A stretch of DNA of 64,000 nucleotides, from NCBI GenBank assembly GCA_033442325.1, contig JAWQFM010000004.1:882264-946263 (forward strand), read 5' to 3'. How positions within the stretch are numbered: the first letter of the stretch is position 1; every line of letters starts with the position of its first letter. A program made the translations under genes and the position numbers. Positions 1,648 through 64,000 of this stretch are shown piece after piece. The notes under the pieces are model-generated. The model saw only the letters and a list, made by a program, of their open reading frames with translations, was not told the DNA's origin and ran no database searches. The stretch comes from Salpingoeca rosetta. Lineage: Eukaryota; Protista; Choanoflagellata.

Positions 1648-2689
1648 TGCGTTTCTTGCTTGCTTGTTGTTTGTGTGGGATGATGAAAATGCGATTTATG
1701 GTGTCGTTTATCGAAAGTGAGCGCGGCGCACTCTCAGTGCTGAAACCTGTGGAAACCTAGTTGGCAATGTGGGAATGAACACTCCTACGCTGCTATGAAG
1801 CAGAAACAGAGAAACACTGAGCTCCCACACGACAGCATTAGAAAGGGCTGCGCGTGCGAGTGAGACGATGCTCCTCAGAGGCAACTACGTCGTCAACACC
1901 CGTCAGCATCGTCGTCATCGTCGTCATCAGTCTGTCATGGTGAGCGGCGTGTTGTGACAGCAGCATCAAAGCAAGGGAAGACGTGAGGGCACAAGCGGAA
2001 GACTGCACGCGTATCAAATACAACAAAGGACACAGAAGCCCATCAGATCTATGAGCAGCTGTCAACGTTGCAGCAGAGCACGCGCCAGACGATACATCCT
2101 ACCTCGACTGCCTGAACGACTGATGACACAAAGTGCACAGAGCCTGGGCCCAGGTCACAGTGCAGCATCTCTCCTGTCATGGCTGCCGTCGAAGATGAGG
2201 GCTGCGCTGACACATGCGAAGAAGATGAAGAAGATGATGCCGCGGGCAACGCTGGCAACTCCTGCTGCGTGCAGGTCAATGCAATGGTCTAATCGTGACG
2301 GAGGGGAGGGGGAAGGGGGAGGCTTTGCAAGACCAACACAAGCGCATCAAGCAGTGCACAAACCGGAAACAACCTCATGCAATACCAACTACGACAGCCG
2401 ACAGGACGTCCATAGCCCCAACACAACCACTGCACTGCGGATGCTTACGCTCGCTGTTGAAGAGGAGGACATGGTAGTCTCGCCGGAGGGCGGCCGTGCC
2501 TCGTTGGAGTTTCCCTGTGTCCCTGATTGTTGTGGCTCTGGATGAGGCGACTGCGAGAGCCACAGCACAGTGCCACGTTCACATGGCAAGATGTTGCCAC
2601 CCGTGAGATTGCGGCCATGGTGTGCAAGCGGTGGCGTTCTTTGTTGCAGAGAACAGCCCACACCACACATGCACAGCATACGCACACAC

Positions 2690-2870
2690 CGTGCACATCG
2701 CCCATTCACACCTCATGCACAATACAAACACCTCACGCACCAGACCTCACACAAGCTCAGCATACGCACACACCACGCAAATCGCCCATTCACACCACGC
2801 AAATTGCCCATTCACACCACGCACGCCATGCACATGACCATGCAAATCTCCCATTCACACCTCACACCAC
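2690..2870. repeat. Imperfect ~22-bp tandem repeat (aaatcgcccattcacaccacgc), probably intronic
   Basis: Repeated cccattcacacc units are visible. Confidence 0.6.
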
Positions 2871-2889
2871 ACACACACACACACACGCA

Positions 2890-4037
2890 CCGATCGAGCC
2901 GAGGATTGGCCACTGTCGTCGTCGTCATCGTCATCATCCGCGTCATCATCATCTGTGTTGATGTTCAAAGCTTGTGCTTCAGCCCTGCATCGCAATAATC
3001 ACGACACGCAGTGAGGAGACGAAGCAGTCAGTGAAGCATTGGCGACGAGAAACGAGGAGGAACGGAACCAAAAAAAAAAAAAAAAAAAGAAAGTGGTGAA
3101 TTGAGCACGGCTGCACGACGCTTGAACCGTACCTTCGAACATACAACACCTCTACTTCCGCAGCTCGTGTTGATGGCGGTGATGCTGCTGAAGAAGACGA
3201 AGACGAAGAAGATGCAGGGGCTCCTCTGTCTTGGGTTGCGCTTCCGGACGCGCTGGCCTCAAACACGAGCACGGCCCTCACCCGGGAGGAGACCCCGTTG
3301 GCGACGACAATCTCCGCGACGGGCGGTTTCGACGCAATGCGCCACAGCCGGTGCGAGGCAAACGGCCCGGCTTTCCGAAAGTCACCGGAGCTGAAGTCCA
3401 CCACGGCCACGTGGGCGTCGTGGCCAATCTTCAGCGGTTGTCCTTTGCATTTGCCATTCAGCACAGGGTACGGGTTCCCGTACACAACGTCGCATGCCAG
3501 GACCACGCGATACGATGCGTTTGGGTTCAGGTTCAACACACTGAGATCATTGGGCACATTGTGACCGCGGCATACCTCGGTGAACGCCAAGGCGTATTCA
3601 ATGTCCGGCGTGAAGTAGATGCCTGCACCGTACCACCCATCATCTGTGCTCTTGAGCTGGACAAAATCACCAGCCAAAATGCCGACAACGGCCTCGAATG
3701 ACATGACGCCGTGAAACACGCGCTGCAACCGCACGGGTGGATCCTGGTCGAGCAAGCCTGGATCCAGTACGTTGTAGTAGGTGTTGGCTGTCACGCGTGC
3801 AAGCACTGCCCGCTCCTCTTCGTCGATGGCCCGGCCATTTTGGTGCACATCATGTAGATATCGCGGCGCAAACTTGTGCCGTGGGTCCGTGAGGTTTCCA
3901 CGATACCGGCCCCTCGTTGCCTCAATTGTGTTCATGAATGCGCTGAGAGATTGCGGGTTCCACGTAATTGCGACTGCCGCCAGTTGCTTGAGCACATCAC
4001 TAGCCGCTGCAACGTGCCCGCCAGCCTCAGCAACCAG

Positions 4038-4117
<80 letters not shown>

Positions 4118-7100
4118 TGTGTGTGTATATATATATATATATATGTGTGTGTGCATGTACGTATGTGTGTTATGTGGTGTGTGTTGTGTTGTGTGTGCAT
4201 GTACGTATGTGTGTTGTGTGTGTATGAGTTGCATGCGATAATTGCGAGCACAATGAGTACAGGGGCGGCACGATGGGTCTACAAGTGTACATGTGAGCGT
4301 CCCTCGCGAAAAGGCAGTTGGGAACAAGATGGCAAGACAATACACCCGGTCAGCTGCACGGTCAGCAGCTGCACGGGACACACACGTGCGTGACAAGGGG
4401 CTTACGTCGTTGATGATGCTCGCATGCCTATGAATGTTGAGAGGAGCAATGTGGGTCCACCGACGTTTTGAGAGTTGGTGCGTGTTGGGCGCCAGTTCGG
4501 CGAGCAGATGCGGCGAGAAGTTCCATCGGCCATGGTCAAGCGATTCCTCGTTGTCCTTGAGCGAATCTACGACATCACGAATGTGCTGTGCCATTGACGT
4601 CACCGCCGTTGTGCCCTGCCCGCTGGCCTGCGCCGAACATCGCCAAGCGCCCTCAATGTCAAACAGCGACAGCACCACTTCCCGCACGGTCTTGTGCCGC
4701 TGTGGTCGTGGCAGGCGCAGCACCTGCGTGAAATACTGGTCCAGGGCTGCTGCCGTCTTCTTGCTCACGACATCCGGCAGCGTCGTCGCCAGCCGCTTCA
4801 TGCTGTCAAACGAATCATACTCGTTTGCCTCAGCCCTGCTCGTGCTGCTGCTGACTTCCACATCGTGCCACGCGCTGTCCACAATCACAGGAGCAACGCG
4901 CTGGAGACGAATGAGGTGGTGGTTGGCAAACTTGAACTCGCGCATGGCCAGCATCGCCATCCACTCCAGCAGCACGTTGTCGCAGTAGTCGCTGTGCTGC
5001 AGCTGCCTCATCTGCGCGATGGTGGCAGCAGAGACGATTGGGCAGGCCACCAGGCTCAGCCCAATCGCCGTCATGAACGCGTGCTTGAAGTTGACGCCCG
5101 TCTCCAGGTTGTTGGCGTCCAGAAATGCAACCAGGTTGCGCTGCTCCAAGCGCGGGTGCAGTGCCATCACCAGCCCACTGCTGGCGCGTTGCCTGGGGGG
5201 GGGAGCGGGAGGGGATGTTGGTGGGTTGTTGGGGGGGGGGAATGGGTGAGATGAGGGAGGAAGCTGCATGCAGTTGTCGTGGCTAGTGGGTGGAAGTGAC
5301 ATGCACATACTTGCACACACACACACACACGCACACAGACACACACACACGCACACAGACAGACAGACAGATAGACAGACAGACCCACGCAGTTACACAC
5401 GCACACACACACACACACACGCACACACACACGCACACTCATACACGCACACACTCATACACGCACACATACACACACGCACACGCACACACGCACACAC
5501 AGACACACACACACGCATACAAGTCTCACCGGTAGCTGATGAAGACGTCGTACTTGTCCTGCAGACCGAGAACGGGTATGAGAGGGCCGTATTTTTTGAC
5601 CAGGTCATCAGGTGACAGGAGCTGTTCGTCCACCCACATGCCCTGCTTGCTCTTGTGATGGTGCAGCACGTCCTCAAAGAACAGCAGCGTCTTGTCGTCG
5701 TACGGCAGCAGCAGGCTGCTCTTCAGCTCAGGATAGCGCTCTCTGGCAGCCTCGCTGATCACCTTGTGCAGCATGTGCACCGTCTGCAACATAGCGCGTG
5801 GCTGCGCACTCGTGATCTTCATCTTGATGCCGCCAACAGCCGGCACAAGCTGCAGTTCAAGCTTGGTGGATTCCATGAAGCAGATGGCATGGGTGCGGCT
5901 CAGCTTGGGCTCCTGCGATGCTCCATGCTGCGCGTGCGCCATCACATGCGCCAGCACCACGGTAAACAGTCCCTCTGGCAGGAACGATGCGTGCTGTGCA
6001 TCATCAACACACACACTCGCACTTCGCTTGAACTGCTTCAAACTGAAGGCGACGTAGGCTGTCTTAACCTCGTATCCAAAATACGGGTTGGCCTGTTGTG
6101 CTGCTGTCGTGCTCAGAGTGACAGATTCCATCGTGCTGCTGTGGCGAATGGTCATCGGCAGGATGGCTGGGACCAGGTACTGCTGCTCTCGCGCGCGCGT
6201 GTCAACACCCTCGCTGCCATCATCACCGTCACGGTGGCCAGAGTTGGGGCGGGTGAGTGCTCTGCGGCTGTCCACCAGCTTGGGTGGAGAGTACTCAACA
6301 CATAGTCCGTACTGCATCATGAGGCGCAGGAACGGCACCACCAAGTTGCTGTGCACGTCGTTCCACAGCACATCCAGCAGGCGGCGGTGCAGGATACCGC
6401 GGTCAACCAGGTCGTCCCACAGGTGTGCGCCAACGGCCCTCGCCTCGCCGTCACGCACATCGTGGTGCAGGTCAAAGTTGCGGATGACGCGCGTCATCAT
6501 GTCCACAGCCCACTGTGGGCTCAGAATCACATAATCTTCCATGCCAGGCACGCTGTCATAGTACAGCACCATGGAATACAGGTGCAGGAACTGGAGGCAG
6601 GCCCTCGTTTCGTCACGCGTGCGCAGCCCACATGTGCGGGCAAGCTCTGCCACTTCGCCAAACGTGAGCAGCGGCCGCTTCTCGTCGCGGGCAATGGCGT
6701 TGAGCTTGTCGTAGAGGTGGAGGTAGGGCACAGCCACCTCCTGGCTCACGTACTCCTGCGCCAGTGCTGTGGAGGAGATGGTCTGGCGCAGGTCCTGGAT
6801 CATGGGGTCATTGATGGACTTGGTGTTGTCAACGGGCCAGAACCACAGACCATGCTTGTCGTTGTGGACGACGCCAGGGAAAGCGGGGTTGTGGCGCAGG
6901 CGGCTGTATATGCCGCATGAAATGACTTCGTGCTGCTTCCGCTCGCTGATCTTGTCAGCGAAGGTGCCGACGATGAGGACGGGTGCGCCCTTGGCGTGGA
7001 GGTGGAGGGAGGACAGCCAGTGCTCCATAAACTCCCACGTCTCAGCCCGCTTGCTCTCGTCTTGGTACAGCAGGTCCTCCATCGAGAAGACCAGCAGGTA

Positions 7101-7175
7101 CACCGCGTACCTGTTGGGTGGGTGGGGTGATGAAGGGAGAGGTGAATGGAGGAGAGGTGGTGGAGGGACTGCAAG

Positions 7176-7267
<92 letters not shown>

Positions 7268-10200
7268 CACTCAAACACACAGACACACACGCACACACAC
7301 ACACACACAAACGAATCACTCACTCTGTGAGGAAGAAAGGGTGGAAGATGTAGAAGGTGGACTGCCCGCCAAGGTCAAACACCTTGAATGTCACCCTGGC
7401 TTTACCCTCGCCCATGACGGCGTCCACGTTGAACTCCTTGATCGCCTTCTCGATATCCTCAGTTGAGACACTGGGGCGAGACATGCTGGCTGAAATTGCA
7501 GCTGATGCGCTCTGCTGGTGTTGCTGAGACTGCTTGGGCAGTTTGGGTGATGACGATGAGGAGGAGTTGTACGCATCATATTGCGTGGAGACTGATGTTG
7601 GCTGTGTCTCCGTTGACATGGATGCTTGTCTGTCATCATCATCATCATCGCCATCCTCCACCAGCTGATGTTGCTCCTCAATTCGTCGTTGATGCTCCTT
7701 CATCGCCGCTGTCACTGCCTCCTTCATCGCTGCGTCCATCTTAGTTGCCCTTGCCAGCGCCGTGCCCAATAGCGTGCGCATGTACTCGCTCAGGCCGCTC
7801 GTAAGGTGCTTTGTGATGCGACGGCATGCAAGGAGATGATGTGAGGTGACATGTAAGAGGGTGTGCCTGCAGGCAAGCGCGCAGTCACCATCATTTCACA
7901 CACACACACACTCACACTTCTCACCTGCCAGTTGCAGACGTCCATGGACTCGACAATGACAGACAGGTCCATGCTGTCGGCGCCCAGCGTGGAGTGCTCT
8001 TGCATGTTGAACTCCTTGCCCATGAGTGAGCGAAGGGTGGTGGTCTTGCCAGCACGCCCCTCGCCAACCAGCATCAGCTTTGCGCGCCCCGCCATTTGCG
8101 TGTCTGAGTGAGCTGCAAGCCGATTCATTATCCTCTTGAGCTCGTCGATGCCTTGCTTGCCATTGACATGCGCATTCCATAGTGGCATGCTATTCAAAGG
8201 ATCGCAACGGCTGGTTTCTTGGTGAGGAACGATCATGACAGCATCGGAAGTGGTGTGCTCCACGGCAACTTGCTTGTTATCTGCCAGCAATTGGTGTTCG
8301 CGCTTCTTCCTCTGGGCTGCATTAAATGCAGACATGCCTTCATCATCGGTAGACCTGCCAAAAAGTAGCGCATGCTCGAAGGTGACAACCTCGAAAAGAC
8401 AATGGAAGCAGAGTGTCCCACTTCGCCATATGTTTCCAACAGTGCATAGGTTTCTAACCAATCTGTTTCGAGTTCGCGATCCAGAGGCAAGGTATCACCG
8501 AAGCCACGGGCACAGGCGAGAGAATTGTTCTTCAAACTGCAAGGTACAGGAGAATTCGTGTCACGTCATGAGCAAGGACACAAGCAGCAAAGGTTGCGGG
8601 CCGAATCGACAGGAAACATGTTGCATTGGCCCACACCCCACAAAATGGCGCTACACTCACTCAAGACGTTTGAGGGCTCGATTTGAATCCAATACTCGAC
8701 CCAAAGCCTTGCCGCCTTCCGCTGTGATCGAATTGTGTTGCAAACTGGCAAGCAAGCAAACGGCAGCGGTGGCCAAAAGGATGTCAGAACACTCATGTGA
8801 CAAGCGCTAACGCTTCAACAACCATCAACCAGGCCGAGCTTCTGAGACACGCTGCAGATTTACTTGAGCTGCGTCAGAGCGCTGTTGTGCTCCAGCATCT
8901 TGGCCAGGGAGATGGCTGCCTGGTCGCCCAACCGGTTGTTAAAGAGCCTATGACAAGGACGCGAACGTGTCATGCACCACAACATAGTCAGGAAGATCGC
9001 AAGTCGGTCGAAGCTGCGTCGGAAGGATAAACCCGAGGAGAGAATCGAAGGACAACACTCGCGTATCGCAATGCAAGAAACGGAAAACCAAAAAGCGGAT
9101 CAGTTTGCTTACACAAGTTCCCGGAGTGTGTTGTTGCCCTCCTGTAACGCCTTGGCCAGCTTGACAGCACCAGCATCGCCGATTGCATTGTCACCCAAAC
9201 TTCAAGCAAAGATTGACGAAGACCCGAAATCAACTCAACATGCAAGTTTGGGAGGTGGTAGGCAGACACTCAAGGAAGTGGCAACAAACAAGTGTGCATT
9301 CATCTCCCAAAATGCACATGCACTTGAACAGTCACCAGTCTCTCGAACCACATTTCACTCACTGAAGTAGTCGAAGGGTTGTATTGTGTTTCAACAAAGT
9401 GGCTAACCCATCGGCAGCGTCGGAACGCACGCGGTTGCCGAATAGCCTGGAAAACAATGTGAGACAACGGATGAGTTGCATGAGGTCGTGGTCACACCAC
9501 GCGAAATTACGTGTGTTGCGAAGCAAGAACGTGGAACACAGGAAAAGGTTGCTCACTTACGAAAACTCCACAATCGTCGGATTGGTTTTGAGGACAGCAG
9601 CCAAGGCAATGGCACCAGGAGCTGCAATTAGGTTGTTGCCCAAGCTTGCATGGCGCACGGTGTTCATGTCAATACCAAGGCGAAACCAGAAGAAACTACT
9701 GCGTTACAATCAGAAGAAGCCACACCGTGACAACACAAGCGCGCACAAAGAAAGTCCAACGCGTACACATCAACATACACGTACACATACACAGGACAAG
9801 CCATGGGCAACTCAAGAACTCACTCCAGCCGTTTCATACACGTGTTTCCTTTCAGTGCCTCCACCAACATGCGAATTTCGTCGTCGTCAAGACCAATTGC
9901 TGGCAAGCTAGCACATGAGCACATGGAGTCAGAATTGGCGCTTCATGCTCAAGAAGAACATGTCACAACCTCTCATGCTTGAAAGAAGATGGTCATGCAT
10001 GGTAATCGTGGTACTCAGACACGCACACGCATACACACGCACATGCGTGCACACACACAGACACGCACAAAGGTAGCTCGCAGGCGCAGGCAAACATTGC
10101 CATGCTTTGCACAAATGCACACAGTTCAGTCAAGCATGTAGCGCGGTTGGTCACCACATCCCATCGTGAACCTCAACTACAAGAGAATGACAACACTGAC

Positions 10201-10413
10201 ACACATGAACCGATAGACCGATTAACACGCTCTCTGTCCGTTGCCAAGACACGGGTGTCCTTGCACTTGTACACACAGATCAAAGCATGAGTCTTACAGA
10301 ACTTCTTTTCTGCATGCATTGGTCACGATGGCTTTGATTCTCTGCTGTGTCTCCGCGGTCAGCTTTGTCGTGGCGATCAAGTCATGGAGGTCCAGCGTCC
10401 TTGTCCGTTCCAT
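2890..10413 (-). CDS. ROCO protein: RI-type LRRs - Roc GTPase - COR - TIR - PARP-like ADP-ribosyltransferase (multi-exon, ~1,650 aa; 3' end uncertain)
   Basis: ATG 10413 ([12 protein letters not shown]). Six LRR exons (e.g. [28 protein letters not shown]). Roc G1 [10 protein letters not shown]3 FDLGGQ, G4 [11 protein letters not shown] ([13 protein letters not shown]...VILSPQW). [12 protein letters not shown]|QRASS...FLD...[15 protein letters not shown]...[10 protein letters not shown]...YA...AEIVV. All introns checked are GT-AG and phase-compatible, e.g. 5193-5529 (phase 2) and 4038-4405 (phase 0). Confidence 0.85.
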
Positions 10414-13510: not shown

Positions 13511-16500
13511 CAGACGCGCAAGGTCACACAGACACATAGACACACAGGGACAAACACACAAACACACACACAAACAAACACACACAGGCAAAGTGTACAG
13601 CTCACGCGCTCAAACAAGTCGCTGGTACAGAGCGTACACACACAACCGCACTCACGCACTCTGAATCTCAGGTGTATGACCCGCGACGCAAAACTGCACG
13701 CGCCCGTCGCTAAGCTCCCGCTCCACGTGTTGCACGTGGTGCTTGTCGCACGCCGCCTTGATCACCGACAGATCCAGGCTGCGCGGCATGTTGAGCGTGT
13801 ACGTCTGCACGTGTGCACGCACATGGCGTTGCGTCCACGCCTTGCACTGCTCCAGCACATGCTCCATGCCGCGGAAGACGCACAGCAGCTTCTCGGGCCC
13901 CGACGGGCCGTCCTCCACGATCGTGCCAAAGTGCAGCGGCACAGACGAGGACGTCGTGGGATGGGCGGTGCCGGCCTGCGTGCTCGCATCAGCATCGCCC
14001 CCGGTCATGGCGTAGTTGGAGTCCTCCTGCACGTCGCAGGCAAGCACGTGCGTCACAGAGTCCTGCAGGTCGTTCACGTGCATGCCCACGTGCTCCTTCC
14101 TGGGGCTCACGTACACCCAGTGGTCCTGGAAGTCCACCGTGAAGTAGCGGTCAACCAGCTTGCCGGGGGTGTTGGTCGTGTACTGGATCTTGAACTTGAA
14201 GAAGCGCGCCGACTTCCACGCCTTGCGGTTCTTGTACTCCAGCCACCGCTGCAGGACATCTGGATCAACCGTCCGGCGCATGTTGCGCTCGTCCTCCGCA
14301 GCCGCAGTTGCACGGGCGTCGGCGACCACGCGGGCGGCCTCCTCCTCACTCATCTTGAAGTGCTCCTTGTGCAGGTACTTGTCGGGGAAGCAACCGCACG
14401 GCTTTGTCATCACATTGGGCATCTCGCGCGCATGCTCCACAGCAACGCCGCCAGCAGCGACACCCTTGTGTTTACCGACGCTGCCGCGCTGGCCATCACT
14501 GCCATCATCGCCATCACCACCATTACCAGCATCATCATCATCATCATCGTCGTCGTTGTCAGCAGTGCTGCGCTTGCGCTTGGCAGCGATGGCAGCCCGG
14601 TACTTGTTGAAGGCGTTTTCAATCAGCAGCGTCGCGTCGTGCGTAAACCCGTTCCAGGCGGCCTTGTTGTCCAGCTCCGCCTTGGAGGGCGGCTCCGTGT
14701 ACGTGGGGCCCGTGTACAGCCACGTGTGGATGGGGTCAGGCGTCTCATCGGCCGGCGCATCGAGGGCGCTGCGCTGCAGGTCCTCATACAGCCCGCTGCC
14801 CACCTTCTCACCATAGTACTTCTCAAACGTCTGCTTAAACGCCGACAGCGTGCTCACGTCCTCGGTGATGATGGTCACGCGGATGGTGTCGAAGAACGTA
14901 CCGTCGCGGTCCACCTCGTCAATCACCTCAAACAGCGCGCGTGCAGACGCGTATGGGGAGCAGCGGAAAGCGCCGCACCCGAGCGCGCACGTGGCGAGCG
15001 AGCGGATGTTGTTGTCCCGCGCCGTCGTCAGCAGCGCGCGGTACGCCGTCTTCAGGTCCGCAGCCGTCTGCGTCACCGTGCTGCCAAACTCGGGCGCAAA
15101 ATTTGGCGCAACCATGTGCAGCACGTGCTCAATGTTGGACGAGAGGGCCAGCGCGCCGGACGTGGTCACGCGCGCCTCGTTGCACCGCAGGGGGCCGCTC
15201 CTCTCCAACGAGTCCTTGCAGGCAGCATCAAACTCCGTGCCAGCGGCCTGCGAGATGGCAAACGCCACGCCGCCGTCGTTCATCAGGTCCGGGTTGGCCG
15301 AGTTGACAATGGCGTTCATGTCACGGTCGTTGATGATGCTTCCCTCGCGAATCTCCACGCGCAGCGTGCCGGCCTTCCTGCGCACGCGTCGCCGCACGTT
15401 GCGCGCACGCGGCACCTGTGCCTCCTTCAGCAGGCGCACAATTACGCCGAGCGACTCCGCATACAGTTGCACCGCGGGCAGCGTCTCGCTGATGGTGTGG
15501 TACTGGTATGGCTCCACCTCCCACACGGCCTGCTTCACCTTGGCCGGGAACAGCCTCTCGCACGTGGTCAGCAGCACCTCGGACGCCGCCGCCATCTCCT
15601 TGCGTGGGCCTTCAAGCACCAGCTTCTTTGGCCTTTGGTGCGCCGGCACTGAGGTCGACAGGCTGTCGCCCCGGCCAGAGTCGTACGTGCCCTGCGCTCG
15701 TTGTTGTGATGTCTCTCCTGCGTGTGCTGCCTGCTCAAAAGAGCCAGTGCCAGCAGAGTTTGCCGAAGCAGCGCCCGTGCTTGCGGTACGACCGGCATCA
15801 GCGCAAACGCCATCTTGCTCATCATCGTCGTCGTCGTCTTCGACGTCCACCAGCTTGAGCTTGGTGTTGCTGCAGTGCTTGTTGGCGGCGAGCGCCGTGT
15901 TGACCTCGTCCATGGCTGCGCGCGCCATCACTGCCAGGTCAGAGGCGTCCAGCTCCTTGAGGGACAAATGCGGCAGCGCAAGCTTCGTCAACCGCTCCAC
16001 CATGTCCGAGCCAACCGTGTGCTGCACAATGGCGTGCTCCTGCAGGTTCTCAATTGCCTGCTTGCAATCGTCGGCCTCGCGCGCACGCAGCGACTGCACC
16101 AGCACGCAGCGCGCCTTGTCCTTGTCAAACAGGGCGGTGTTGTCTGTCTCCAGGACGCCCGTGAGCGGGTGGTTGCTGCGCAGCCGCTCCAGCTCGCTGT
16201 CCAGCAGATCTTTGGCCACGGACATGGGCACCTGGCACACGTACCGCGTGGGCCGGATGTGGGCGATGGTGCGGAACGTCGACTCCATCGTCGGGATGAC
16301 CGTTTGCATCACATCGCGCCGGCCAGCCACCATCCACACGTTGCGCTCAGTGGGCGTGCCAATCACGTCCTGTGGTGCAACGTAGCTCACCACGCGATCC
16401 TTGCTGCGGCACAGCGTGCGGCTGGCCTTGGTCAGGTCGTTGAACAGCTTGCGCTTCAGGGAGGTGACGTCCGCCTCGGACATCTCCGGCACGTGCGACG

Positions 16501-19108
16501 TGTCAATGACCGGCAGCCCGAGCACGTGGCACAGGTACTCCTTGAGCGTGTCCTGCACCGCATTGTCAAACGCCGTCAGCTGCCGCTGCATGCCCTCCAC
16601 GGTCACGGGCACGCTTGAGGCGCACGCGTCCCTGTCCTCCGCGCTGGGCTTGCGCACATACACGCGGAACTTGCGGGCCAGCTCAAGCAGCTGCGAGTCC
16701 AGGAAGCGGTATTGCATGCCCGTCACGCTGATCGTCGTCTGCGACTTGATGTTGGCGCCGACGGTGCTGTTGATATAGCCGAGCCCGCGCTCCCTGTCCT
16801 GGTCCAGGTAGTAGTACAGCGAGTACTCCAGCAGCATGGCGCCCCGCTGCTGCAGCTGGGCGTGCAGCGCGGCGCCGTCCAGGTCGCGCGTGTGTATGAG
16901 CGCCTGCTTCATGTCGTGCGACAGCGCCGTCTCCTTGCACTCCAGCGTGAGCAGGTAGTCCCGCAGCTGCTGCACGTGCTCCGGTGCCCCCACCAGCCAC
17001 AGCCGGGCAGTGGTGAGGCCGCACGGCTGCGCGCCACCCGCGGCCTGATGGTGCACGTGTGTGGCTGCCTGCAGTTTCCCGCCGTCAATGGAGGGCCAGG
17101 GAGCGTTGGCCGGGTCGCCGTGCCCGGGGTGAGTCGGGCGGGCGTGCTTGGCCCTGTTGGCCACGTCGCGCTCGTGGGCGCGGCTGGTCAGCAGCACGTG
17201 CTGCAGCAGCGAGGCCTTGGTCGACGTCACCACCTCCCGCAGCATGTCGAGCGAGCCCGGGATGCACACCTCCTCCATCACGAGGTCGGAGATGGCGCCA
17301 GCGAGCGCATCGCACGATGAGCGAAGCGCGTTTGCATCTGTGCTGCGGAGGATAACGGCCGGCGCAACGGCGTCCAGCTTGTATGTCACGCCAGCCATGA
17401 TGGTGGCCTTCATCGCAGCCACCTCGGCAAAGTGCCGGAACTGGTGCGGGTACATGGCCAACAAGGTGACGCTCGTGTTGGCGCTGCGCTCAATCACAGA
17501 CGCCATGGCATCCGCCACCTGCTTGTCATCGCCAAACCCATACAGCGCCCACAGCGGCTGCGCAACGGCCGTAGGGTCGTCATTATCTGCTGTTGCTGTG
17601 GATGTTGTTGTCGTTGTCGTTGGCGTTGCTGATGTCGCTGTTTGTGATGCGGCGTGCTGGGGTGCCACGGGCGATGCGATGGGTGGGGTGCTGGTGACGG
17701 GCGACGGCCGCACAAACTCGACATCCCGCATAGCCCTGTGTGCCGTGCTGGCGTAGGGCAGCAGGTCAAGCGTCGGGTAGCGCACGAGCTTCAGGCCGTA
17801 GTCGTTCAGGACGTGTTCCATGATCTTGTCGTCGCCCAGCACGCGGTCGCTGCGGGCAAACGGGTGGAAGGCAGGCGCGAGGAAGCTTGCAAGCAGCTTG
17901 GCCTGCGACCACACCAGCACGGCGGTGCTGCTCGTGAAGCAGATGCGGTTATTTGTGGTTGCAGCCGCCAGCACATCAAGGTCCTTGGCCACGCTGCTCT
18001 TGTTGAACGCCTCGACGAGGTCCGACAGGAGGCCGCTCAGCTTGGGGTCGAGCACAGCCACGTGCACGTCGTTCGGGTAGCACAGGCGCGCCACAAACTT
18101 GTGCGAGACAGAGGTGGCAAACTGCCTCCTGCGGACACACGCATGCGCCGCACGCGTGTCTGTTATCTCCAGCACAAACACGCGCTGCAGCGTGGTCTCA
18201 GAGGACGCACTGCTGCTCTTGCTCTTGCTGTCGTCGTTGTCAGCATCGCCTTTCTTGTAATGATGAGGGTCGTGCACAACCGTGGGCTTGGCAGCATTGT
18301 GCGCCTCACTGCGACCTCCACCATCCTGCTGTTGTGCTCCTTGTTCTTGTTGTTGTTCGGCCATGCGCGTGCTGGCAAACGGCTGGATGCGGGACAGCGT
18401 GTCCTTGAGGGACTGTGGGATGGGCACAAGCTTTGCCTTGCCGCCAAAGTTCGTCTCAAACGCCTGCACAATGTCGCGGCCCGTGGTGGGCTTGCTGTGC
18501 GGGGTACAGGTGACGACAATGCGGTGCAGCGGTGCCTGCCGCGCCTCCAGACGACAGGCCCCCGCCGTGTCAATGGGCAGTGGCAGCAGGCTCCGGAACG
18601 CCTCCTCGCTGTCGGCAACCACGTCAACGCTTGCACAGCGCATGTCCAGAAAGACCTGCAGCGACTGGAAGTTGACGCCAGCGCGCTCCAGCGTCGCCTG
18701 CACGCTGCGGTACGTGTCGGTGGGCCAGGGCATGGCGGCAGTCAAGCCCTTGCGGTCACGCTTCCTGGCTGCCTCGCTCAGGTAGAACGTGATGCGCTTT
18801 GCCTGGCCCGCAACAGGCGCCGGCGTGATGGATGTTGGGGACGCAGGGGAGGAGGACGTGGAGTCCTTGCCCTTGCTCTTCCAGTTCTTTGCCTTTGGGT
18901 CTGGGAACACGTTGAGCTTCGTGCCCAGCACCTCCCGCTGGTCGTACAGGCGGACCATCAGCTCCGCGCTCTCCCGCGACACAAACCTGTTGCGAGGGAA
19001 GGGGGGGGGTTGGTTGGTTGGTTGAGGACGTGGTTGAGGGAAGGACACGCGTGTGCACATGCAGGAGCATCTGTGCATGCACGTGCACGCACATACACGC
19101 ACACACAC

Positions 19109-19144
<36 letters not shown>

Positions 19145-59954: not shown

Positions 59955-61333
59955 ATGAGTGAGGCGGCATCCTCCTTTGGTCTCGACACCAATCAACTGC
60001 GACAAAACCTTACTCCGTGGAGCGACAGCGCTTGGAGACACCGATCTGACGACGTTCATGACGACACACCAACCCAAACACTTTTTGAGAGAAGGGGCCA
60101 TGGAGAGACATGGTCTGTGCCAGACAGAGAGTCCATTGTGGTTGAAGGCGATGACTCTGTTGTGGTTGAGCGCTGCGCTCAGACATGCCAAGGTGAGACT
60201 TGTTGAAAACTTCATCGGCTTGTGTGAACGCAGGTGCTGATGCATGGGCACAGCACATGTTCACATTGCAACATTGTTGATATGGACCGTAGGACTGTTG
60301 TCTGCTTGATTGATCATTGTCTCATGACACTGCTTTCTTGCATGGTCAAGTGTATTCATGTGAGGACACGCGATTGCATGCACCTCGCCCCGATCTCACC
60401 AAACAGAAGGTGTGTGCGGTGTGTGTGTATGTGTGTGTGTGTGCGTGTTTGTGTGTGTGTGTGTCTGCTGTGCGAGTGTGCGTTGGCGCGTATGTGTGTG
60501 AGTGAGTGTGTACGGTCCATCCGTCCTTGTGTCTCAATGTTGTGTGTTTGACAATTGCTAAGGCATCCTCCGTGAATACCTCTTCCTCACTGGTTTGCAA
60601 CTGTGTGTCAGCTGACAACAACAACGCGTGAGCTGGTCGAGCTTCGCCAACCCCTACAGGCTGCGCGCACAGGCTTCATGCTTGTGGGTGGGGGACATTC
60701 CGGCAAGACGACCACTCTCCACTCCCTAATGGGTGACGACTTCAGGGAGGACAAAGCTCGCGTCATTGGCACCGACAAGCTGGATCGTTCTGTCGTCGTG
60801 ACATCCATGGACATCTGCAACTGGCAGGTGTGTGCGTGCGTGTGTGTGTGTGTCTATTGTGATCGCAGCTTGTCACTTACTGGAGGGCAAGTATCTTTTC
60901 CAAGCTCACATGTGCACCTGGATTCCACCATGTCACAACAGCCCCTGACGCACGACATCAGTGAATTCGTGCGCACGCTGTCGTACACGGCCCTGCAGAG
61001 GACGATTGACCAGCAGCAACAGCTCAAGGAACAGGTGCAACCTGCAGAAGGCCATGGCATGCAAGACGACAAGCCCCGCCCCTCCTTCTCCTTGTCGCTC
61101 AAGCATGAGCGGTCTCATCACACATCTACGACACAAGCCAGCAGGTGTTGCCCCACTGCCTCCACCGAGGAGATTGAGAAGGCAATCAAGGGCATGAACA
61201 TTTATCTGCCCATCGAGGCAAGCAAGCCTGGGGTCACCTTCAAAGTGTTTGACCTGGGAGGCCAGTCCACCTTCCACATCTTCTACCCGTTCTTCTTCAC
61301 CAAGTGAGTGGGATGTATTTGCATGTGCGTGTG

Positions 61334-61414
<81 letters not shown>

Positions 61415-64000
61415 GACCACCGCTCCCCCGCACCACCGCAATTGCCTTCACCCCACACCCTCCTCACTCCACACCACTCCCACAACAGGTACGCGGTGTA
61501 CCTGCTGGTGTTTTCCATGGAGGACCTGCTGCACCAAGACGAGAGCAAGCGAGCAGAGGCGTGGGAGTTTATGGAGCACTGGTTGTCTTCCCTCCACCTT
61601 CACGCGAAGGGCGCACCCATCCTCATCGTCGGCACCTTCGCTGACAAGATCAACGAGCGGAAGCAGCACGAGGGCATCTCACGTGACATTTACAGTCGCC
61701 TGCGCCACAATCCCGCTTTCCCTGGCGTCATCCACAATGACAAGCACGGGCTGTGGTTCTGGCCCGTTGACAACACCAAGTCCATCCGTGACCCCATGAT
61801 CCAGGACCTGCGCCAGACCATCTCCTCCACAGCACTGGCGCAGGAGTACGTGAGCCAGGAGGTGGCTGTGCCGTACCTCCACCTCTACGACAAGCTCAAC
61901 GCCATTGCCCGCGACGAGAAGCGGCCGCTGCTCACGTTTGATGAGGTGGTGCAGATTGCACGCACATGTGGGCTGCCCACATGCGAGGAGACGAGAGCCT
62001 GCCTCCAGTTCCTGCACCTGTACTCCATGGTGCTGTACTACGACCACGTGCCAGGCATGGAAGACTATGTGATCCTGAGTCCACAGTGGGCGGTGGACAC
62101 AATGACGCGCGTCATCCGCAACTTCGACCTGCACCGCGATGTGCGGGATGGCGAGGCGAGGGCCGTTGGCGCGCAGGTGTGGGACGACCTCGTTGACCGC
62201 GGCATCCTGCACCGTCGCCTGCTTGATGTTCTATGGAAGGAGTTGGGAGGTGACATGATTGAGCCTTTCATTTGCCTCATGAAACATTACGGCCTGTGCA
62301 TGGAGTACACAACACCAACGGTGCAACTACCCAGTCATCAACAGCAACATCAACACCACCAACAGTACCTGGTTCCTGCCGTTCTGCCAATGACGATTCG
62401 CCACAACACCAGCACGGTGGCGTCCGTGTCACTGAGCACGACGGCAGCACAGCAGGTCAACCCATATGTTGGTTATGAGGAGAAGACGGCGTTTATCGCC
62501 TTCAGCCTGAAACCATTCAAGCGAAGTGCGAGCGTGCGAGTTGAAGATGCGCAGCAAGCGTCATTCCTGCCAGAGGCTTTGTTCACCGTTGTACTGGCCC
62601 ATGTGATGGCGCATGCACAGCACGGTGCATCGCAGGCGCCCAAGCTGAGTCGCACCCATGCCATCTGCTTCATGGAGTCGACCAAGCTGGAGCTGCAGCT
62701 AGTGCCGGCTGTTGGCGGCATCAAGATGAAGATCACGAGTGCACAGCCGCGCGCCATGCTGCACATGCTGCACACCATGATCAGCGAGGCCGCCAGAGAG
62801 CGCTACCCGGAGCTAAAGAGCAGCCTGTTGGTGCCATTCGACGCCAAGACGCTGCTGTTCTTCGAGGATGTGCTGCACCACCACAAGAGCAAGCAGGACA
62901 TGTGGGTGCACGAACAGCTCCTGTCACCCGATGACCTGATCACCAAGTATGACCCTCTCCTGCCCGTTCTCGGCCTGCAGGACAAGTACGACGTCTTCAT
63001 CAGCTACAGGTACGCTCTGCGGTTTGTTGTGCTGACACTGCAAATGTTTTGCAGCACCTTGACGCAAATGATGCGTCCGCTTCCTCGTTCAGACTTACCC
63101 TTCCTCAATGCTTGAACACTCCTTCAGGCTCGAAGAGGTCTTCGCTCTCTTGTCAGCAATCGCCAACTTGCAAGGCGCACAGAATCGGCTCAAAGTGCGC
63201 GCAGATGCGTGCGACATACTTCCGACGCCATTGCTGCGACGCACGACCCTGAACGCGTTGGCCCAAAGCACCGTCGTTTGTCCCGTCATATCTGTCTCAT
63301 CGATCGAACAGATTGTGAAGGACTGTCATGACGGCAAACCGAGTGAGCTCCTGCTCGAGTGGACAGCTATTCTTAGTATGAAGGATCTCGTCCGCGGCGA
63401 CGACAGCGCAGCTGCGCAGAAGCTACGCCTGCGAACCGTCATTCCAATTATCGTGGCAGCCCCATCTCACCGGAGCGATGATGCCGCCGTGCCAGCCTCA
63501 CATGAAATCGTGGTTGTGATGCAGCGGGCCGCAGCGCAGTTGCCGGACACTTCTCATGACCCAACAATGACCACGCTTACTTCGGAATGGAATGTGGGCG
63601 TTCAGCTGCCATCGAACCTGCCGACACCGCACGTGGTCGTTACAGAGTTGATGGGGAGGGCCGAGGCTGCCGCTGTACCGGTGCTTCAGTCACAACATGA
63701 CGACTTCGCCACCAACATCGAACGATACCTTCTCATTATCATGGACTCTGTACAGGAGCACGGACAATCTGTACACACACGACCAGAAAGTGCAAAGCAA
63801 CTGCGACAAAAGGCAAAACAATTGTTCAACCAAACTTACCGACTGCTATGGGGCTTGTCACGGAAGGATCGCGTATTTCTGGCTCAGGAGTGCGACATTG
63901 ATGCACCCGTGGACATGACGATTCAGGACCTCATTCGTGGCCTCACAGACACAGTACCTGAAGATGACCCGCTTGGCCTGCCTTTCTTCCATGCGGACAG
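59955..64000 (+). CDS. Second ROCO protein without LRRs: short N-terminus - Roc - COR - divergent TIR - unknown C-terminus (runs off the window)
   Basis: VGGGHSGKTT; FDLGGQ; COR exon 61489-63009 very similar to 5530-7110. After DVFISYR, an exon from ~63129 is open to the window end and contains VVCPVIS...SELLLEW...LRTVIPII. The 5' exons are tentative. Confidence 0.8.

What the first reader, a model, noticed from the sequence alone, without database searches (positions are those of the whole stretch)
2890..10413. LRR-Roc-COR-TIR-ART: an NLR-like receptor carrying two NAD+-consuming effector domains
Seen: one phase-consistent spliced reading frame joins RI-type LRRs, a Roc-COR switch, a TIR with the Glu at the catalytic position (DNVLLEW) and a PARP-type ART with an intact H-Y-E triad (VFHG / GIYFT / AEIVV). 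The TIR-to-ART junction is the GT-AG intron 4038-4405, phase 0 on both sides. Established: TIRs such as SARM1, plant TNL and bacterial Thoeris TIRs hydrolyse NAD+ on oligomerisation, H-Y-E ARTs transfer ADP-ribose from NAD+, and Roc-COR domains are dimerising GTPase switches. Inference: a sensor-switch-effector immune receptor in which Roc-COR replaces NACHT/NB-ARC, driving NAD+ depletion or ADP-ribosylation in a unicellular relative of animals. I know of no characterised protein with this combination.
Basis: partly seen in the sequence, partly recalled or inferred. Interest (0 to 1): 0.92.

Follow-up and report, generated by a model that had tools for sequence, protein, structure and literature searches.

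The report
Choanoflagellate Roco protein with TIR, PARP
One gene of the choanoflagellate Salpingoeca rosetta (PTSG_11903) encodes a single protein joining leucine-rich repeats, a Roc-COR GTPase switch, a SARM1-like TIR domain and a PARP-type ADP-ribosyltransferase; I found no description of this pairing of two NAD+-using enzymes, and the immune-sensor role it suggests is untested.

Summary
The window's minus strand reproduces the public 1728-aa protein PTSG_11903 (XP_004996163.1, F2U2Y6) of Salpingoeca rosetta exactly, as 16 GT-AG exons.

- **Transcripts:** spliced contigs from two studies join the TIR exon to the ART exon at exactly 4406|4037.
- **Gene limits:** the gene runs past the finding's lower limit, to 1893.
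- **Domains:** Roc and COR-A are clear Pfam matches. The TIR family profile matches SARM1 best. A 58%-identical paralogue (F2UB80) with the same DNVLLEW motif makes cADPR in E. coli, according to a 2026 preprint.
- **ART exon:** it falls below Pfam's PARP cut-off, but its family profile hits only PARPs. Its model aligns to PARP12 at Z 14.7, and H-Y-E is conserved.

New context:
- It belongs to a family of at least 25 Roc-COR-TIR(-SAM-like) genes.
- Its ART is a phase-0 terminal exon cassette nested among S. rosetta LRR-kinase-ART genes, so it was probably captured recently.
- The same domain set recurs in PTSG_12997 and in a Didymoeca costata transcript.

The immune role and both enzyme activities of this protein remain inferred. 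It is a new variant of a known kind.

The parts
10298..10413 (-). Probable true first coding exon (ATG at 10413; [38 protein letters not shown]; GTAAGA donor). It is not in the public model.
   Evidence: Homologous to the N-termini of paralogues P0103, P0106 and P0111. Donor and acceptor checked, and joining to 9907 gives the same spacing as the paralogues. No RNA evidence obtained.
8459..9924 (-). RI-type LRR region. One repeat per exon, all phase 2: (9907/9924)-9824, 9644-9561, 9446-9363, 9199-9113, 8947-8864, 8744-8661 and 8536-8459.
   Evidence: Exon map. Pfam LRR_6 E 2.7e-17 on P0001. Introns 8537-8660 and 8355-8458 are seen as joints in spliced contigs.
6948..8089 (-). Roc GTPase domain (aa ~290-560), spread over three exons. 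P-loop GEGRAGKTT at 8065-8039, DLGGQ at 7379-7362, TFAD at 6968-6951. A low-complexity insert of about 110 aa lies between the P-loop and switch II.
   Evidence: Pfam Roc 63.1 bits (cut-off 27) and Ras 37.9 bits. Motif coordinates. Intron 7809-7924 is removed in contig X4 record 13.
5583..6830 (-). COR domain (COR-A at aa 635-786, then a COR-B-like region), inside the 1581-nt exon 7110-5530.
   Evidence: Pfam COR-A 61.7 bits (cut-off 35.3). Paralogues give weak COR-B matches.
4691..5558 (-). TIR domain (aa ~1024-1200), split by intron 5193-5529. Putative catalytic Glu1109 at 4966-4964 in DNVLLEW.
   Evidence: Pfam TIR_2 25.8 bits, below the cut-off of 28. Family profile matches SARM1 TIR at E 2.7e-6. 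58% identical to F2UB80, whose TIR makes cADPR.
4038..4405 (-). Phase-0 GT-AG intron between the TIR exon and the ART exon.
   Evidence: Exon map. Removed exactly in contigs X4 record 9 and X7 record 16. A paralogue has a phase-0 intron at the same position.
3255..4037 (-). PARP-type ART domain (aa 1296-1556), lying within the single exon 4037-3133. His1404 at 3713-3711, Tyr1436 at 3617-3615, Glu1537 at 3314-3312.
   Evidence: Family profile hits only PARPs in the PDB. AF2 model pLDDT 87. Foldseek E 5e-7. VIA-align Z 14.7 to PARP12. hhalign probability 98% to a Pfam-significant PARP domain, with H, Y and E aligned.
1893..3254 (-). Low-complexity Ser/Asp-rich C-terminal tail (aa 1557-1728): the end of the ART exon plus exons 2984-2891, 2550-2449, 2264-2103 and 1931-1893 (stop).
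   Evidence: Exon map. Intron 2985-3132 is seen as a joint in X4 and X7. pLDDT is below 50 past residue 265 of the model. No Pfam domain found.

Best explanation
**What it is.** PTSG_11903 is one real, spliced S. rosetta gene for a cytosolic protein of about 1730-1760 aa. Its order is RI-type LRRs, Roc-COR GTPase, SARM1-like TIR, PARP-type ART (H-Y-E), then a disordered acidic tail.

**Family.** It belongs to a large lineage-specific family of (LRR/ANK)-Roc-COR-TIR proteins. The paralogues I checked end in a weak SAM-like domain.

**Origin (inferred).** In this gene the SAM-like tail was replaced by a phase-0 terminal exon cassette encoding the ART. The cassette was captured recently from the S. 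rosetta LRR-TKL-kinase-ART family.

**Likely working (inferred).**
1. The LRRs bind a ligand or hold the protein in an auto-inhibited state.
2. Nucleotide-dependent changes in Roc-COR dimerisation bring TIR domains together.
3. The assembled TIRs cleave NAD+ to cADPR, as shown for a paralogue.
4. The ART uses NAD+ to ADP-ribosylate itself or a target.

This would make it a GTPase-gated, two-output NAD+ device of the kind used in innate-immune or stress sensing.
For: **Shown: gene structure**
- The window rebuilds the public protein exactly from 16 GT-AG exons.
- Spliced contigs from two studies join the TIR exon, the ART exon and the next exon.

**Shown: Roc-COR-TIR part**
- Roc and COR-A are above the Pfam cut-offs.
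- At least 25 paralogues share the TIR region at 45-73% identity. CDNVLLEW is present in 23 of the 25.
- The TIR profile matches SARM1 best.
- The paralogue F2UB80 (= P0122, 58% identical) is listed as active and cADPR-positive, with catalytic residue 1118 in the same motif. The preprint text states that activity depended on the catalytic Glu (preprint 10.64898/2026.04.20.719644).

**Shown: ART part**
- H, Y and E are nearly invariant in 30 relatives.
- The family profile hits only PARPs in the PDB.
- The AF2 model has pLDDT 87 and aligns to PARP12 at Z 14.7, rmsd 2.6 over 157 residues.
- 40 of 75 distant relatives match Pfam PARP.

**Supporting the cassette origin**
- The ART nests in an all-S. 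rosetta kinase-ART clade with 96/91 and 97/89 support.
- The paralogue P0002 has a phase-0 intron at the same position.
- The five paralogue tails scanned all give weak SAM_2 matches.

**Recurrence of the domain set**
- PTSG_12997 is LRR-ANK-TIR-Roc-COR-PARP.
- D. costata P0031 is Roc(partial)-COR-TIR-like-ART on one transcript.
Against: - No activity, ligand or phenotype is known for this protein.
- Its own TIR and PARP Pfam scores are below the curated cut-offs (25.8 vs 28, and 14.6 vs 26.7).
- The TIR structure model failed (pLDDT 45).
- No listed contig bridged the COR-TIR junction. Raw RNA reads of run X21 gave about 0-1 depth on the unique exons.
- It lacks the SAM-like tail that may drive oligomerisation in the paralogues.
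- Its ART branch is longer than its sisters' (0.76 vs 0.20-0.54), which could mean relaxed constraint.
- The immune reading rests on analogy. Roco proteins also serve non-immune signalling.
Confidence: 0.55

Rival explanations
1. Same gene and architecture, but it is a signalling protein rather than an immune one. The Roco-TIR family would transduce environmental or bacterial cues (prey, mating or rosette inducers) or developmental signals. cADPR would act as a second messenger, and the ART as a regulatory modifier.
For: The paralogue TIR makes cADPR. The preprint says most tested TIRs did not deplete NAD+. From background knowledge, Roco proteins in Dictyostelium and animals serve non-immune signalling. 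The brown-alga ROCO paper reports responses to several stresses, not immunity alone. Most ART relatives sit on protein kinases.
Against: Large lineage-specific expansion, one-repeat-per-exon LRR cassettes, shuffling of effector domains and a neighbouring macro-domain gene are all typical of conflict systems. None of this is decisive.
Confidence: 0.3
2. The ART domain is not an enzyme here. It would be a PARP-fold regulatory or binding module (NAD+ or ADP-ribose sensor, or decoy), as in ZAP/PARP13. Only the TIR would consume NAD+.
For: The best PDB sequence match of the family profile is the inactive ZAP domain (E 1.3e-4). P0001's ART scores below the Pfam cut-off and has a long terminal branch. 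A few family members have lost H or E (P0021, P0022, P0023 and P0038).
Against: His, Tyr and Glu are intact in P0001 and nearly invariant across the family, including the YF..D..Y nicotinamide-pocket pattern aligned with PARP12. ZAP itself lacks the triad (background knowledge).
Confidence: 0.2
3. It is a recent evolutionary chimera with little or no selected function: a Roco-TIR gene that lost its SAM-like tail to a captured ART exon and is drifting.
For: The ART capture looks recent, since it lies inside an S. rosetta-only clade. The ART branch is long. The SAM-like domain is missing. Depth in raw RNA run X21 is very low.
Against: All 16 exons are open with canonical splice sites. The catalytic residues of Roc, TIR and ART are intact. 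Spliced contigs occur in two studies. The same domain set recurs in a second gene and in a second species.
Confidence: 0.1
4. It is a gene-model artefact: two neighbouring genes (LRR-Roc-COR and TIR-ART, or Roco-TIR and ART) wrongly merged.
For: No listed contig bridges intron 5193-5529. Contigs break near 4977 and 4748.
Against: TIR and ART are joined in contigs of two studies. The TIR betaA strand and a split codon span intron 5193-5529, and the joined sequence [10 protein letters not shown] matches the paralogues. The contig break at 4977 lies on the family-invariant DNVLLEW motif, where assemblies of paralogues would be expected to fork (my inference). A D. costata transcript carries COR, TIR-like and ART together.
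Confidence: 0.04

Closest known systems
S. rosetta F2UB80 / PTSG_12359 (LRR-ANK-Roc-COR-TIR-SAM-like), whose TIR was tested in preprint 10.64898/2026.04.20.719644
   Same: Same family and the same Roc-COR-TIR core. The TIR region is 58% identical, with the identical CDNVLLEW motif. Table S4 lists that TIR as active and cADPR-producing, with catalytic residue 1118.
   Different: PTSG_11903 has no ANK repeats. It carries a PARP-type ART plus an acidic tail where the paralogue has a weak SAM-like domain. PTSG_11903 itself is untested.
SARM1 (ARM-SAM-SAM-TIR NAD+ hydrolase)
   Same: It is the best solved-structure match of the TIR family profile (E 2.7e-6). The alignment ends five residues before the Glu; continued without a gap it puts Glu1109 on SARM1 E642. 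The usual paralogues also pair the TIR with a SAM-like domain.
   Different: The regulator is a Roc-COR GTPase with LRRs, not an ARM domain. The domain order is reversed (TIR before SAM). This gene has an ART instead of a SAM.
PARP catalytic domains (PARP12, PARP10, PARP14/15, tankyrase)
   Same: Same ART fold: Z 14.1-14.7, rmsd 2.2-3.8 A over 152-172 residues. H and Y align with PARP12, and the YF..D..Y pattern resembles the mono-ART PARPs.
   Different: Only 13-18% identical and below Pfam's PARP cut-off. It keeps the Glu that PARP10, 12, 14 and 15 lack (background knowledge). It has an extra N-terminal sub-domain of about 100 aa that is conserved in the family. It is attached to Roco-TIR or LRR-kinase modules, not to WWE, macro or zinc-finger modules.
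Brown-alga LRR-ROCO candidate immune receptors (PMC11378527, which cites Zambounis 2012 for Ectocarpus)
   Same: An LRR-Roc-COR gene family with one LRR per exon, all phase 2, proposed as immune receptors in which Roco stands in for an NLR-type NTPase.
   Different: The algal proteins are plain LRR-ROCO with 72-nt exons and no effector domain. Here the exons are 84 nt (RI-type LRR) and TIR and ART effectors follow.
PTSG_12997 (S. rosetta, 2282 aa) and Didymoeca costata EP00039_P017754
   Same: Both carry Roc-COR, TIR(-like) and PARP-type ART domains in one protein, and PTSG_12997 also has LRRs (none were detected on the 5'-truncated D. costata transcript).
   Different: In PTSG_12997 the TIR lies before Roc, its motif Glu is Gln (CDNVLLQW), and its PARP is a more canonical, distant type. 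The D. costata ART and COR are only about 24-26% identical, and its ART groups with that species' own ARTs.
NLR / STAND receptors (TIR-NB-ARC-LRR; NACHT-LRR)
   Same: The same logic of repeat sensor, nucleotide switch and TIR effector.
   Different: There is no NACHT or NB-ARC domain. The switch is a Ras-like GTPase with COR, so the likeness is by analogy and not by membership.

Membership tests
ROCO (Roc-COR) GTPases | A Roc (Ras-like) domain directly followed by a COR domain | tested here: met
   Pfam Roc 63.1 bits (cut-off 27) and COR-A 61.7 bits (cut-off 35.3) on P0001.
ROCO (Roc-COR) GTPases | Intact nucleotide-binding motifs (P-loop GxxxxGK[ST], DxxGQ, [NT]xxD) | tested here: met
   [15 protein letters not shown] and TFAD are present. 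GTP binding and hydrolysis were not assayed.
TIR domain (enzymatic, SARM1-like) | Sequence match to TIR models | tested here: inconclusive
   P0001 scores TIR_2 25.8 bits, below the cut-off of 28. Paralogues are above it (33.3 and 35.0 bits). The family profile matches SARM1 TIR at E 2.7e-6 and plant TIRs.
TIR domain (enzymatic, SARM1-like) | Catalytic Glu at the SARM1 E642 position | tested here: met
   The alignment to SARM1 ends at CD/KD. Continued without a gap it puts Glu1109 on E642. The same motif Glu (E1118) is the listed catalytic residue of the active paralogue.
TIR domain (enzymatic, SARM1-like) | TIR (flavodoxin-like) fold | tested here: inconclusive
   The AF2 model had pLDDT 45 and was not usable.
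TIR domain (enzymatic, SARM1-like) | NAD+ cleavage activity | not testable with these tools
   Only a 58%-identical paralogue has been assayed, and it was cADPR-positive.
PARP-type ADP-ribosyltransferase (H-Y-E clade) | ART/PARP catalytic fold | tested here: met
   Model pLDDT 87 and pTM 0.84. Foldseek's 50 listed top matches are all PARP catalytic domains, E about 5e-7. Z 14.7 to PARP12.
PARP-type ADP-ribosyltransferase (H-Y-E clade) | His-Tyr-Glu triad in register | tested here: met
   H and Y align to PARP12's FHG and YF. H, Y and E align to the Pfam-significant PARP domain of P0125 (hhalign 98%). The triad is nearly invariant in 30 relatives.
PARP-type ADP-ribosyltransferase (H-Y-E clade) | Pfam PF00644 score above the gathering cut-off | tested here: not met
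   14.6 bits against 26.7. However, 40 of 75 more distant relatives match PF00644 at E <= 1e-4.
PARP-type ADP-ribosyltransferase (H-Y-E clade) | ADP-ribosyl transfer activity | not testable with these tools
   No assay exists for any member of this subfamily that I could find.
NLR / STAND immune receptors | A central NACHT or NB-ARC STAND NTPase | tested here: not met
   No such Pfam match on P0001 at E <= 0.01. The switch is Roc-COR.

The most novel reading that the evidence does not exclude
Choanoflagellates, which a 2018 survey found to lack LRR-containing NLRs (PMC6040629), would use an expanded LRR-Roco-TIR family as their cytosolic innate-immune receptors. In PTSG_11903, and independently in PTSG_12997 and in a Didymoeca gene, selection has repeatedly attached a PARP-type ART. 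One GTPase-gated receptor would then fire two NAD+-dependent outputs: a cADPR signal and ADP-ribosylation of an invader or host target. The neighbouring macro-domain gene might read or erase that mark.
Probability: 0.25. Interest if true: 0.85.

Novelty: new variant of a known kind. Interest (0 to 1): 0.62.

Why it matters
- TIR NADases and PARPs are the two main NAD+-using effector classes of immunity from bacteria to animals. [quoted passage not shown]
- A recent preprint shows that the TIR of a paralogue from this Roco-TIR family is an active cADPR synthase.
- The work defines a previously unremarked PARP-like cassette family, mostly on LRR/ANK/WD40-kinase proteins. It is shuffled as a phase-0 terminal exon.
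- The Roco-TIR + ART set has formed more than once, which argues for a functional link.
- S. rosetta is genetically tractable, so the idea can be tested directly.

Tried and rejected
- **Single-sequence PDB searches:** phmmer of the ART and TIR exons found nothing. Family profiles were needed.
- **TIR structure:** the AF2 model from 18 close paralogues failed (pLDDT 45), so there is no structural test of the TIR.
- **PADLOC:** no match for the ART. The TIR gave only weak matches (SAVED-TIR 8e-6, ThsB 7e-4).
- **Read laying:** The COR-TIR junction was not bridged by any listed contig. Raw reads of X21 were almost all 95-99% alike, which means they come from paralogues.
- **False joints:** the joints 2936-2944 <-> 7630-7653 are artefacts of two Asp-codon runs. 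I rejected them.
- **PTSG_12997:** I first looked for its TIR between COR and PARP and found none. The TIR lies before Roc.
- **Ancestral architecture:** I considered that Roco-TIR-ART is ancestral to choanoflagellates. The ART tree groups by species and nests P0001 among S. rosetta kinase-ARTs, which favours separate assembly. Gene conversion is not excluded.
- **Papers:** searches for the accessions found nothing.
Full report
**1. What is in the sequence**

The finding lies on the minus strand. Open frames there carry a P-loop exon, a long COR exon, a TIR-like exon and an ART-like exon.

An exhaustive HMMER search with the ART exon returned a 1728-aa public protein, 99% identical over aa 1296-1599. 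It is PTSG_11903 / XP_004996163.1 / F2U2Y6 of Salpingoeca rosetta.

A script rebuilt this protein exactly from 16 window exons with GT-AG introns:

| Exon | Window coordinates |
|---|---|
| 1 | 9924-9824 |
| 2 | 9644-9561 |
| 3 | 9446-9363 |
| 4 | 9199-9113 |
| 5 | 8947-8864 |
| 6 | 8744-8661 |
| 7 | 8536-8459 |
| 8 | 8354-7925 |
| 9 | 7808-7324 |
| 10 | 7110-5530 |
| 11 | 5192-4406 |
| 12 | 4037-3133 |
| 13 | 2984-2891 |
| 14 | 2550-2449 |
| 15 | 2264-2103 |
| 16 | 1931-1893 |

- Intron 5193-5529 splits a codon inside the TIR betaA strand.
- The gene runs about 1 kb past the finding's lower limit, into a Ser/Asp-rich tail.
It is homologous to the N-termini of paralogues and restores their spacing. 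The public model is therefore probably 5'-truncated.

**2. Transcript evidence**

- Two runs from different studies (X4, X7) hold intron-free contigs. X1 holds intron-bearing, DNA-like contigs.
- X4 record 9 (2101 nt) and X7 record 16 (2956 nt) lie on 4406-4977 / 4406-4748 and on 3132-4028. Nine record letters separate the two pieces, which is exactly the masked stretch 4029-4037. The TIR exon is therefore joined to the ART exon at 4406|4037.
- The same contigs skip 2985-3132 and continue downstream.
- Introns 7809-7924, 8355-8458 and 8537-8660 are also removed.
- The COR-TIR junction was not bridged by any listed contig. The contigs stop near 4977, which is the family-invariant DNVLLEW motif, where assemblies of paralogues would be expected to fork (my inference).
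- Continuity across that junction is supported by the split codon and by [10 protein letters not shown] matching the paralogues.
- Raw RNA reads of X21 were nearly all 95-99% alike, so they come from paralogues. Depth on the unique exons was about 0-1.

**3. Domains**

Pfam on the full protein:

| Domain | Result | Against cut-off |
|---|---|---|
| LRR_6 | E 2.7e-17 | above |
| Roc | 63.1 bits | above 27 |
| COR-A | 61.7 bits | above 35.3 |
| TIR_2 | 25.8 bits | below 28 |
| PARP (ART exon alone) | 14.6 bits | below 26.7 |

*TIR*
- A search with the TIR region found at least 25 S. rosetta proteins of type (LRR/ANK)-Roc-COR-TIR, 45-73% identical in that region.
- CDNVLLEW is present in 23 of these 25.
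- Their profile matches SARM1 TIR best (E 2.7e-6), then plant TIRs. The alignment ends at CD/KD and, continued without a gap, places Glu1109 on SARM1 E642.
- A 2026 preprint (10.64898/2026.04.20.719644) reports that an S. rosetta TIR makes cADPR in E. coli. Its Table S4 row 33 gives F2UB80, 1352 aa, TIR 1034-1255, catalytic residue 1118, Active yes, cADPR yes.
- That sequence is P0122 (PTSG_12359), 58% identical to this TIR over 244 aa, with the identical motif.
- The preprint also says most TIRs it tested did not deplete NAD+.

*ART*
- An alignment of 30 relatives shows His (VFHG), Tyr (GxGxYFTPD) and Glu (AEIV) nearly invariant.
- The family profile hits only PARPs in the PDB: ZAP 1.3e-4, then PARP12, 10, 4, 16, 15, 14 and tankyrases. 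FHG and YF are aligned.
- The AF2 model is confident (pLDDT 87, pTM 0.84).
- Foldseek's 50 listed top matches are all PARP catalytic domains, E about 5e-7.
- VIA-align gives Z 14.7, rmsd 2.6 A over 157 residues to PARP12. Tankyrase 2, PARP10, PARP15 and PARP14 follow within 1 Z.
- hhalign to the Pfam-significant PARP domain of PTSG_12997 gives 98% probability, with H, Y and E in register.
- 40 of 75 more distant relatives match PF00644.

**4. Family context and origin**

- The ART relatives in S. rosetta are mostly LRR- or ANK-TKL-kinase-ART proteins. The genome has at least 24 ART-like loci.
- Elsewhere the module follows WD40-kinase, TPR, ANK and, in Paulinella, SidE_PDE-kinase.
- In a maximum-likelihood tree, S. 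rosetta, Microstomoeca roanoka and marine-metagenome ARTs form one clade (98/97). Didymoeca costata ARTs form another (100/99).
- PTSG_11903's ART nests inside an all-S. rosetta kinase-ART clade, with 96/91 and 97/89 support.
- In the paralogue P0002 the ART is also a terminal exon behind a phase-0 intron at the same residue (...TE|LLRAAGGRT against ...ND|LVAEAGGHV). Two further loci show the same acceptor context.
- The five Roco-TIR paralogue tails scanned all give a weak SAM_2 match (E 0.002-0.008). PTSG_11903 has none.
- The simplest reading is a recent exon-cassette capture that replaced the SAM-like tail.

The domain set recurs twice:
- PTSG_12997 (2282 aa) is LRR-ANK-TIR(1064-1245, motif Glu changed to Gln)-Roc-COR-PARP.
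- A D. costata transcript (P0031) is partial Roc-COR-A-TIR-like (DCLLLEWW; hhalign E 2e-5)-ART.

Because the ARTs group by species, the architecture was probably assembled more than once. Gene conversion cannot be excluded.

**5. Surroundings**

- Just upstream on the same strand, a 1830-aa open frame (13655-19144) carries a Macro domain (E 1.5e-22).
- A further Roc-COR-TIR paralogue lies at about 60561-63653 on the plus strand.

**6. Mechanism**

- *Shown:* the gene structure, the domain identities and the conserved catalytic residues.
- *Shown for a paralogue only:* cADPR synthesis by the TIR.
- *Inferred:* LRR sensing or auto-inhibition. Roc-COR nucleotide-dependent dimerisation bringing TIRs together. 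TIR cleavage of NAD+ to cADPR. ADP-ribosylation by the ART.
- *Rivals:* non-immune signalling, a non-catalytic ART, a drifting chimera and a model artefact. Each is scored in its own section.

**7. Comparison and novelty**

- ROCO-TIR fusions have been noted before: TPR-ROCO-TIR in Chondrus (PMC11378527) and ROC/COR-bearing TIR proteins in Aplysia (PMC9334734). The abbreviations in the 2026 preprint's Figure 3 legend include Roc and COR.
- LRR-ROCO genes with one LRR per phase-2 exon are proposed immune receptors in brown algae.
- Richter et al. 2018 found no LRR-containing NLRs in choanoflagellates. They list Ank, Arm and SH2 as TIR partners, not Roc-COR or PARP.
- No paper mentions these accessions or a Roco-TIR-PARP protein.
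- The precomputed Pfam list for the protein lacks PARP.
- The gene is public but uncharacterised, and its ART domain does not appear in that Pfam list.
- It is a member of the ROCO family. It is a TIR and a PARP-fold protein by profile and structure, although below the single-sequence Pfam cut-offs. It is NLR-like only by analogy.

**8. Verdict**

- It is a new variant of a known kind.
- Interest is 0.62.

This scan had noted related Roco-TIR(-SAM) genes elsewhere in the same genome (s1-432384, s1-432458).

Noticed in passing
window 13652-19144 (-): A giant single open frame of 1830 aa, just upstream on the same strand, carries a Macro domain (Pfam E 1.5e-22). An ADP-ribose reader or eraser therefore sits next to a TIR-ART gene.
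   Followed up: partly
window ~60561-63653 (+): A second Roc-COR-TIR family gene. It is 81% identical to PTSG_11903 over the COR exon and at most 84% identical to any retrieved paralogue. It probably runs off the window end.
   Followed up: partly
window 10298-10413 and 9907-9924 (-): The public model PTSG_11903 starts at an ATG (9924) that probably lies in an intron. The conserved N-terminal exon with ATG 10413 is missing from the model.
   Followed up: partly
P0125 = PTSG_12997 (other contig of the same genome): A second protein with LRR, ANK, TIR, Roc-COR and PARP. The TIR lies before Roc, and its motif Glu is replaced by Gln (CDNVLLQW), which suggests an inactive TIR paired with a PARP.
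   Followed up: partly
P0042 / P0130 (Paulinella chromatophora transcripts): A relative of the ART sits in a SidE_PDE-kinase-PARP protein. SidE_PDE is the phosphodiesterase domain of the Legionella SidE family, known from background knowledge to act on ADP-ribosylated ubiquitin.
   Followed up: no
window 2915-2944 and 7633-7650: Two runs of Asp codons (GAT/GAC) attract reads and contigs from unrelated genes. They produced false long-range joints in the read laying.
   Followed up: yes
introns 4038-4405, 5193-5529, 7111-7323, 2551-2890: The larger introns are full of (GT/CA)n microsatellites. These give long spurious Cys/Val or His/Thr open frames on both strands.
   Followed up: no
UniRef entry for F2U2Y6 and most paralogues: They are named 'non-specific serine/threonine protein kinase', although no kinase domain is detectable in PTSG_11903. 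The name was probably carried over from LRRK-type Roco proteins.
   Followed up: partly
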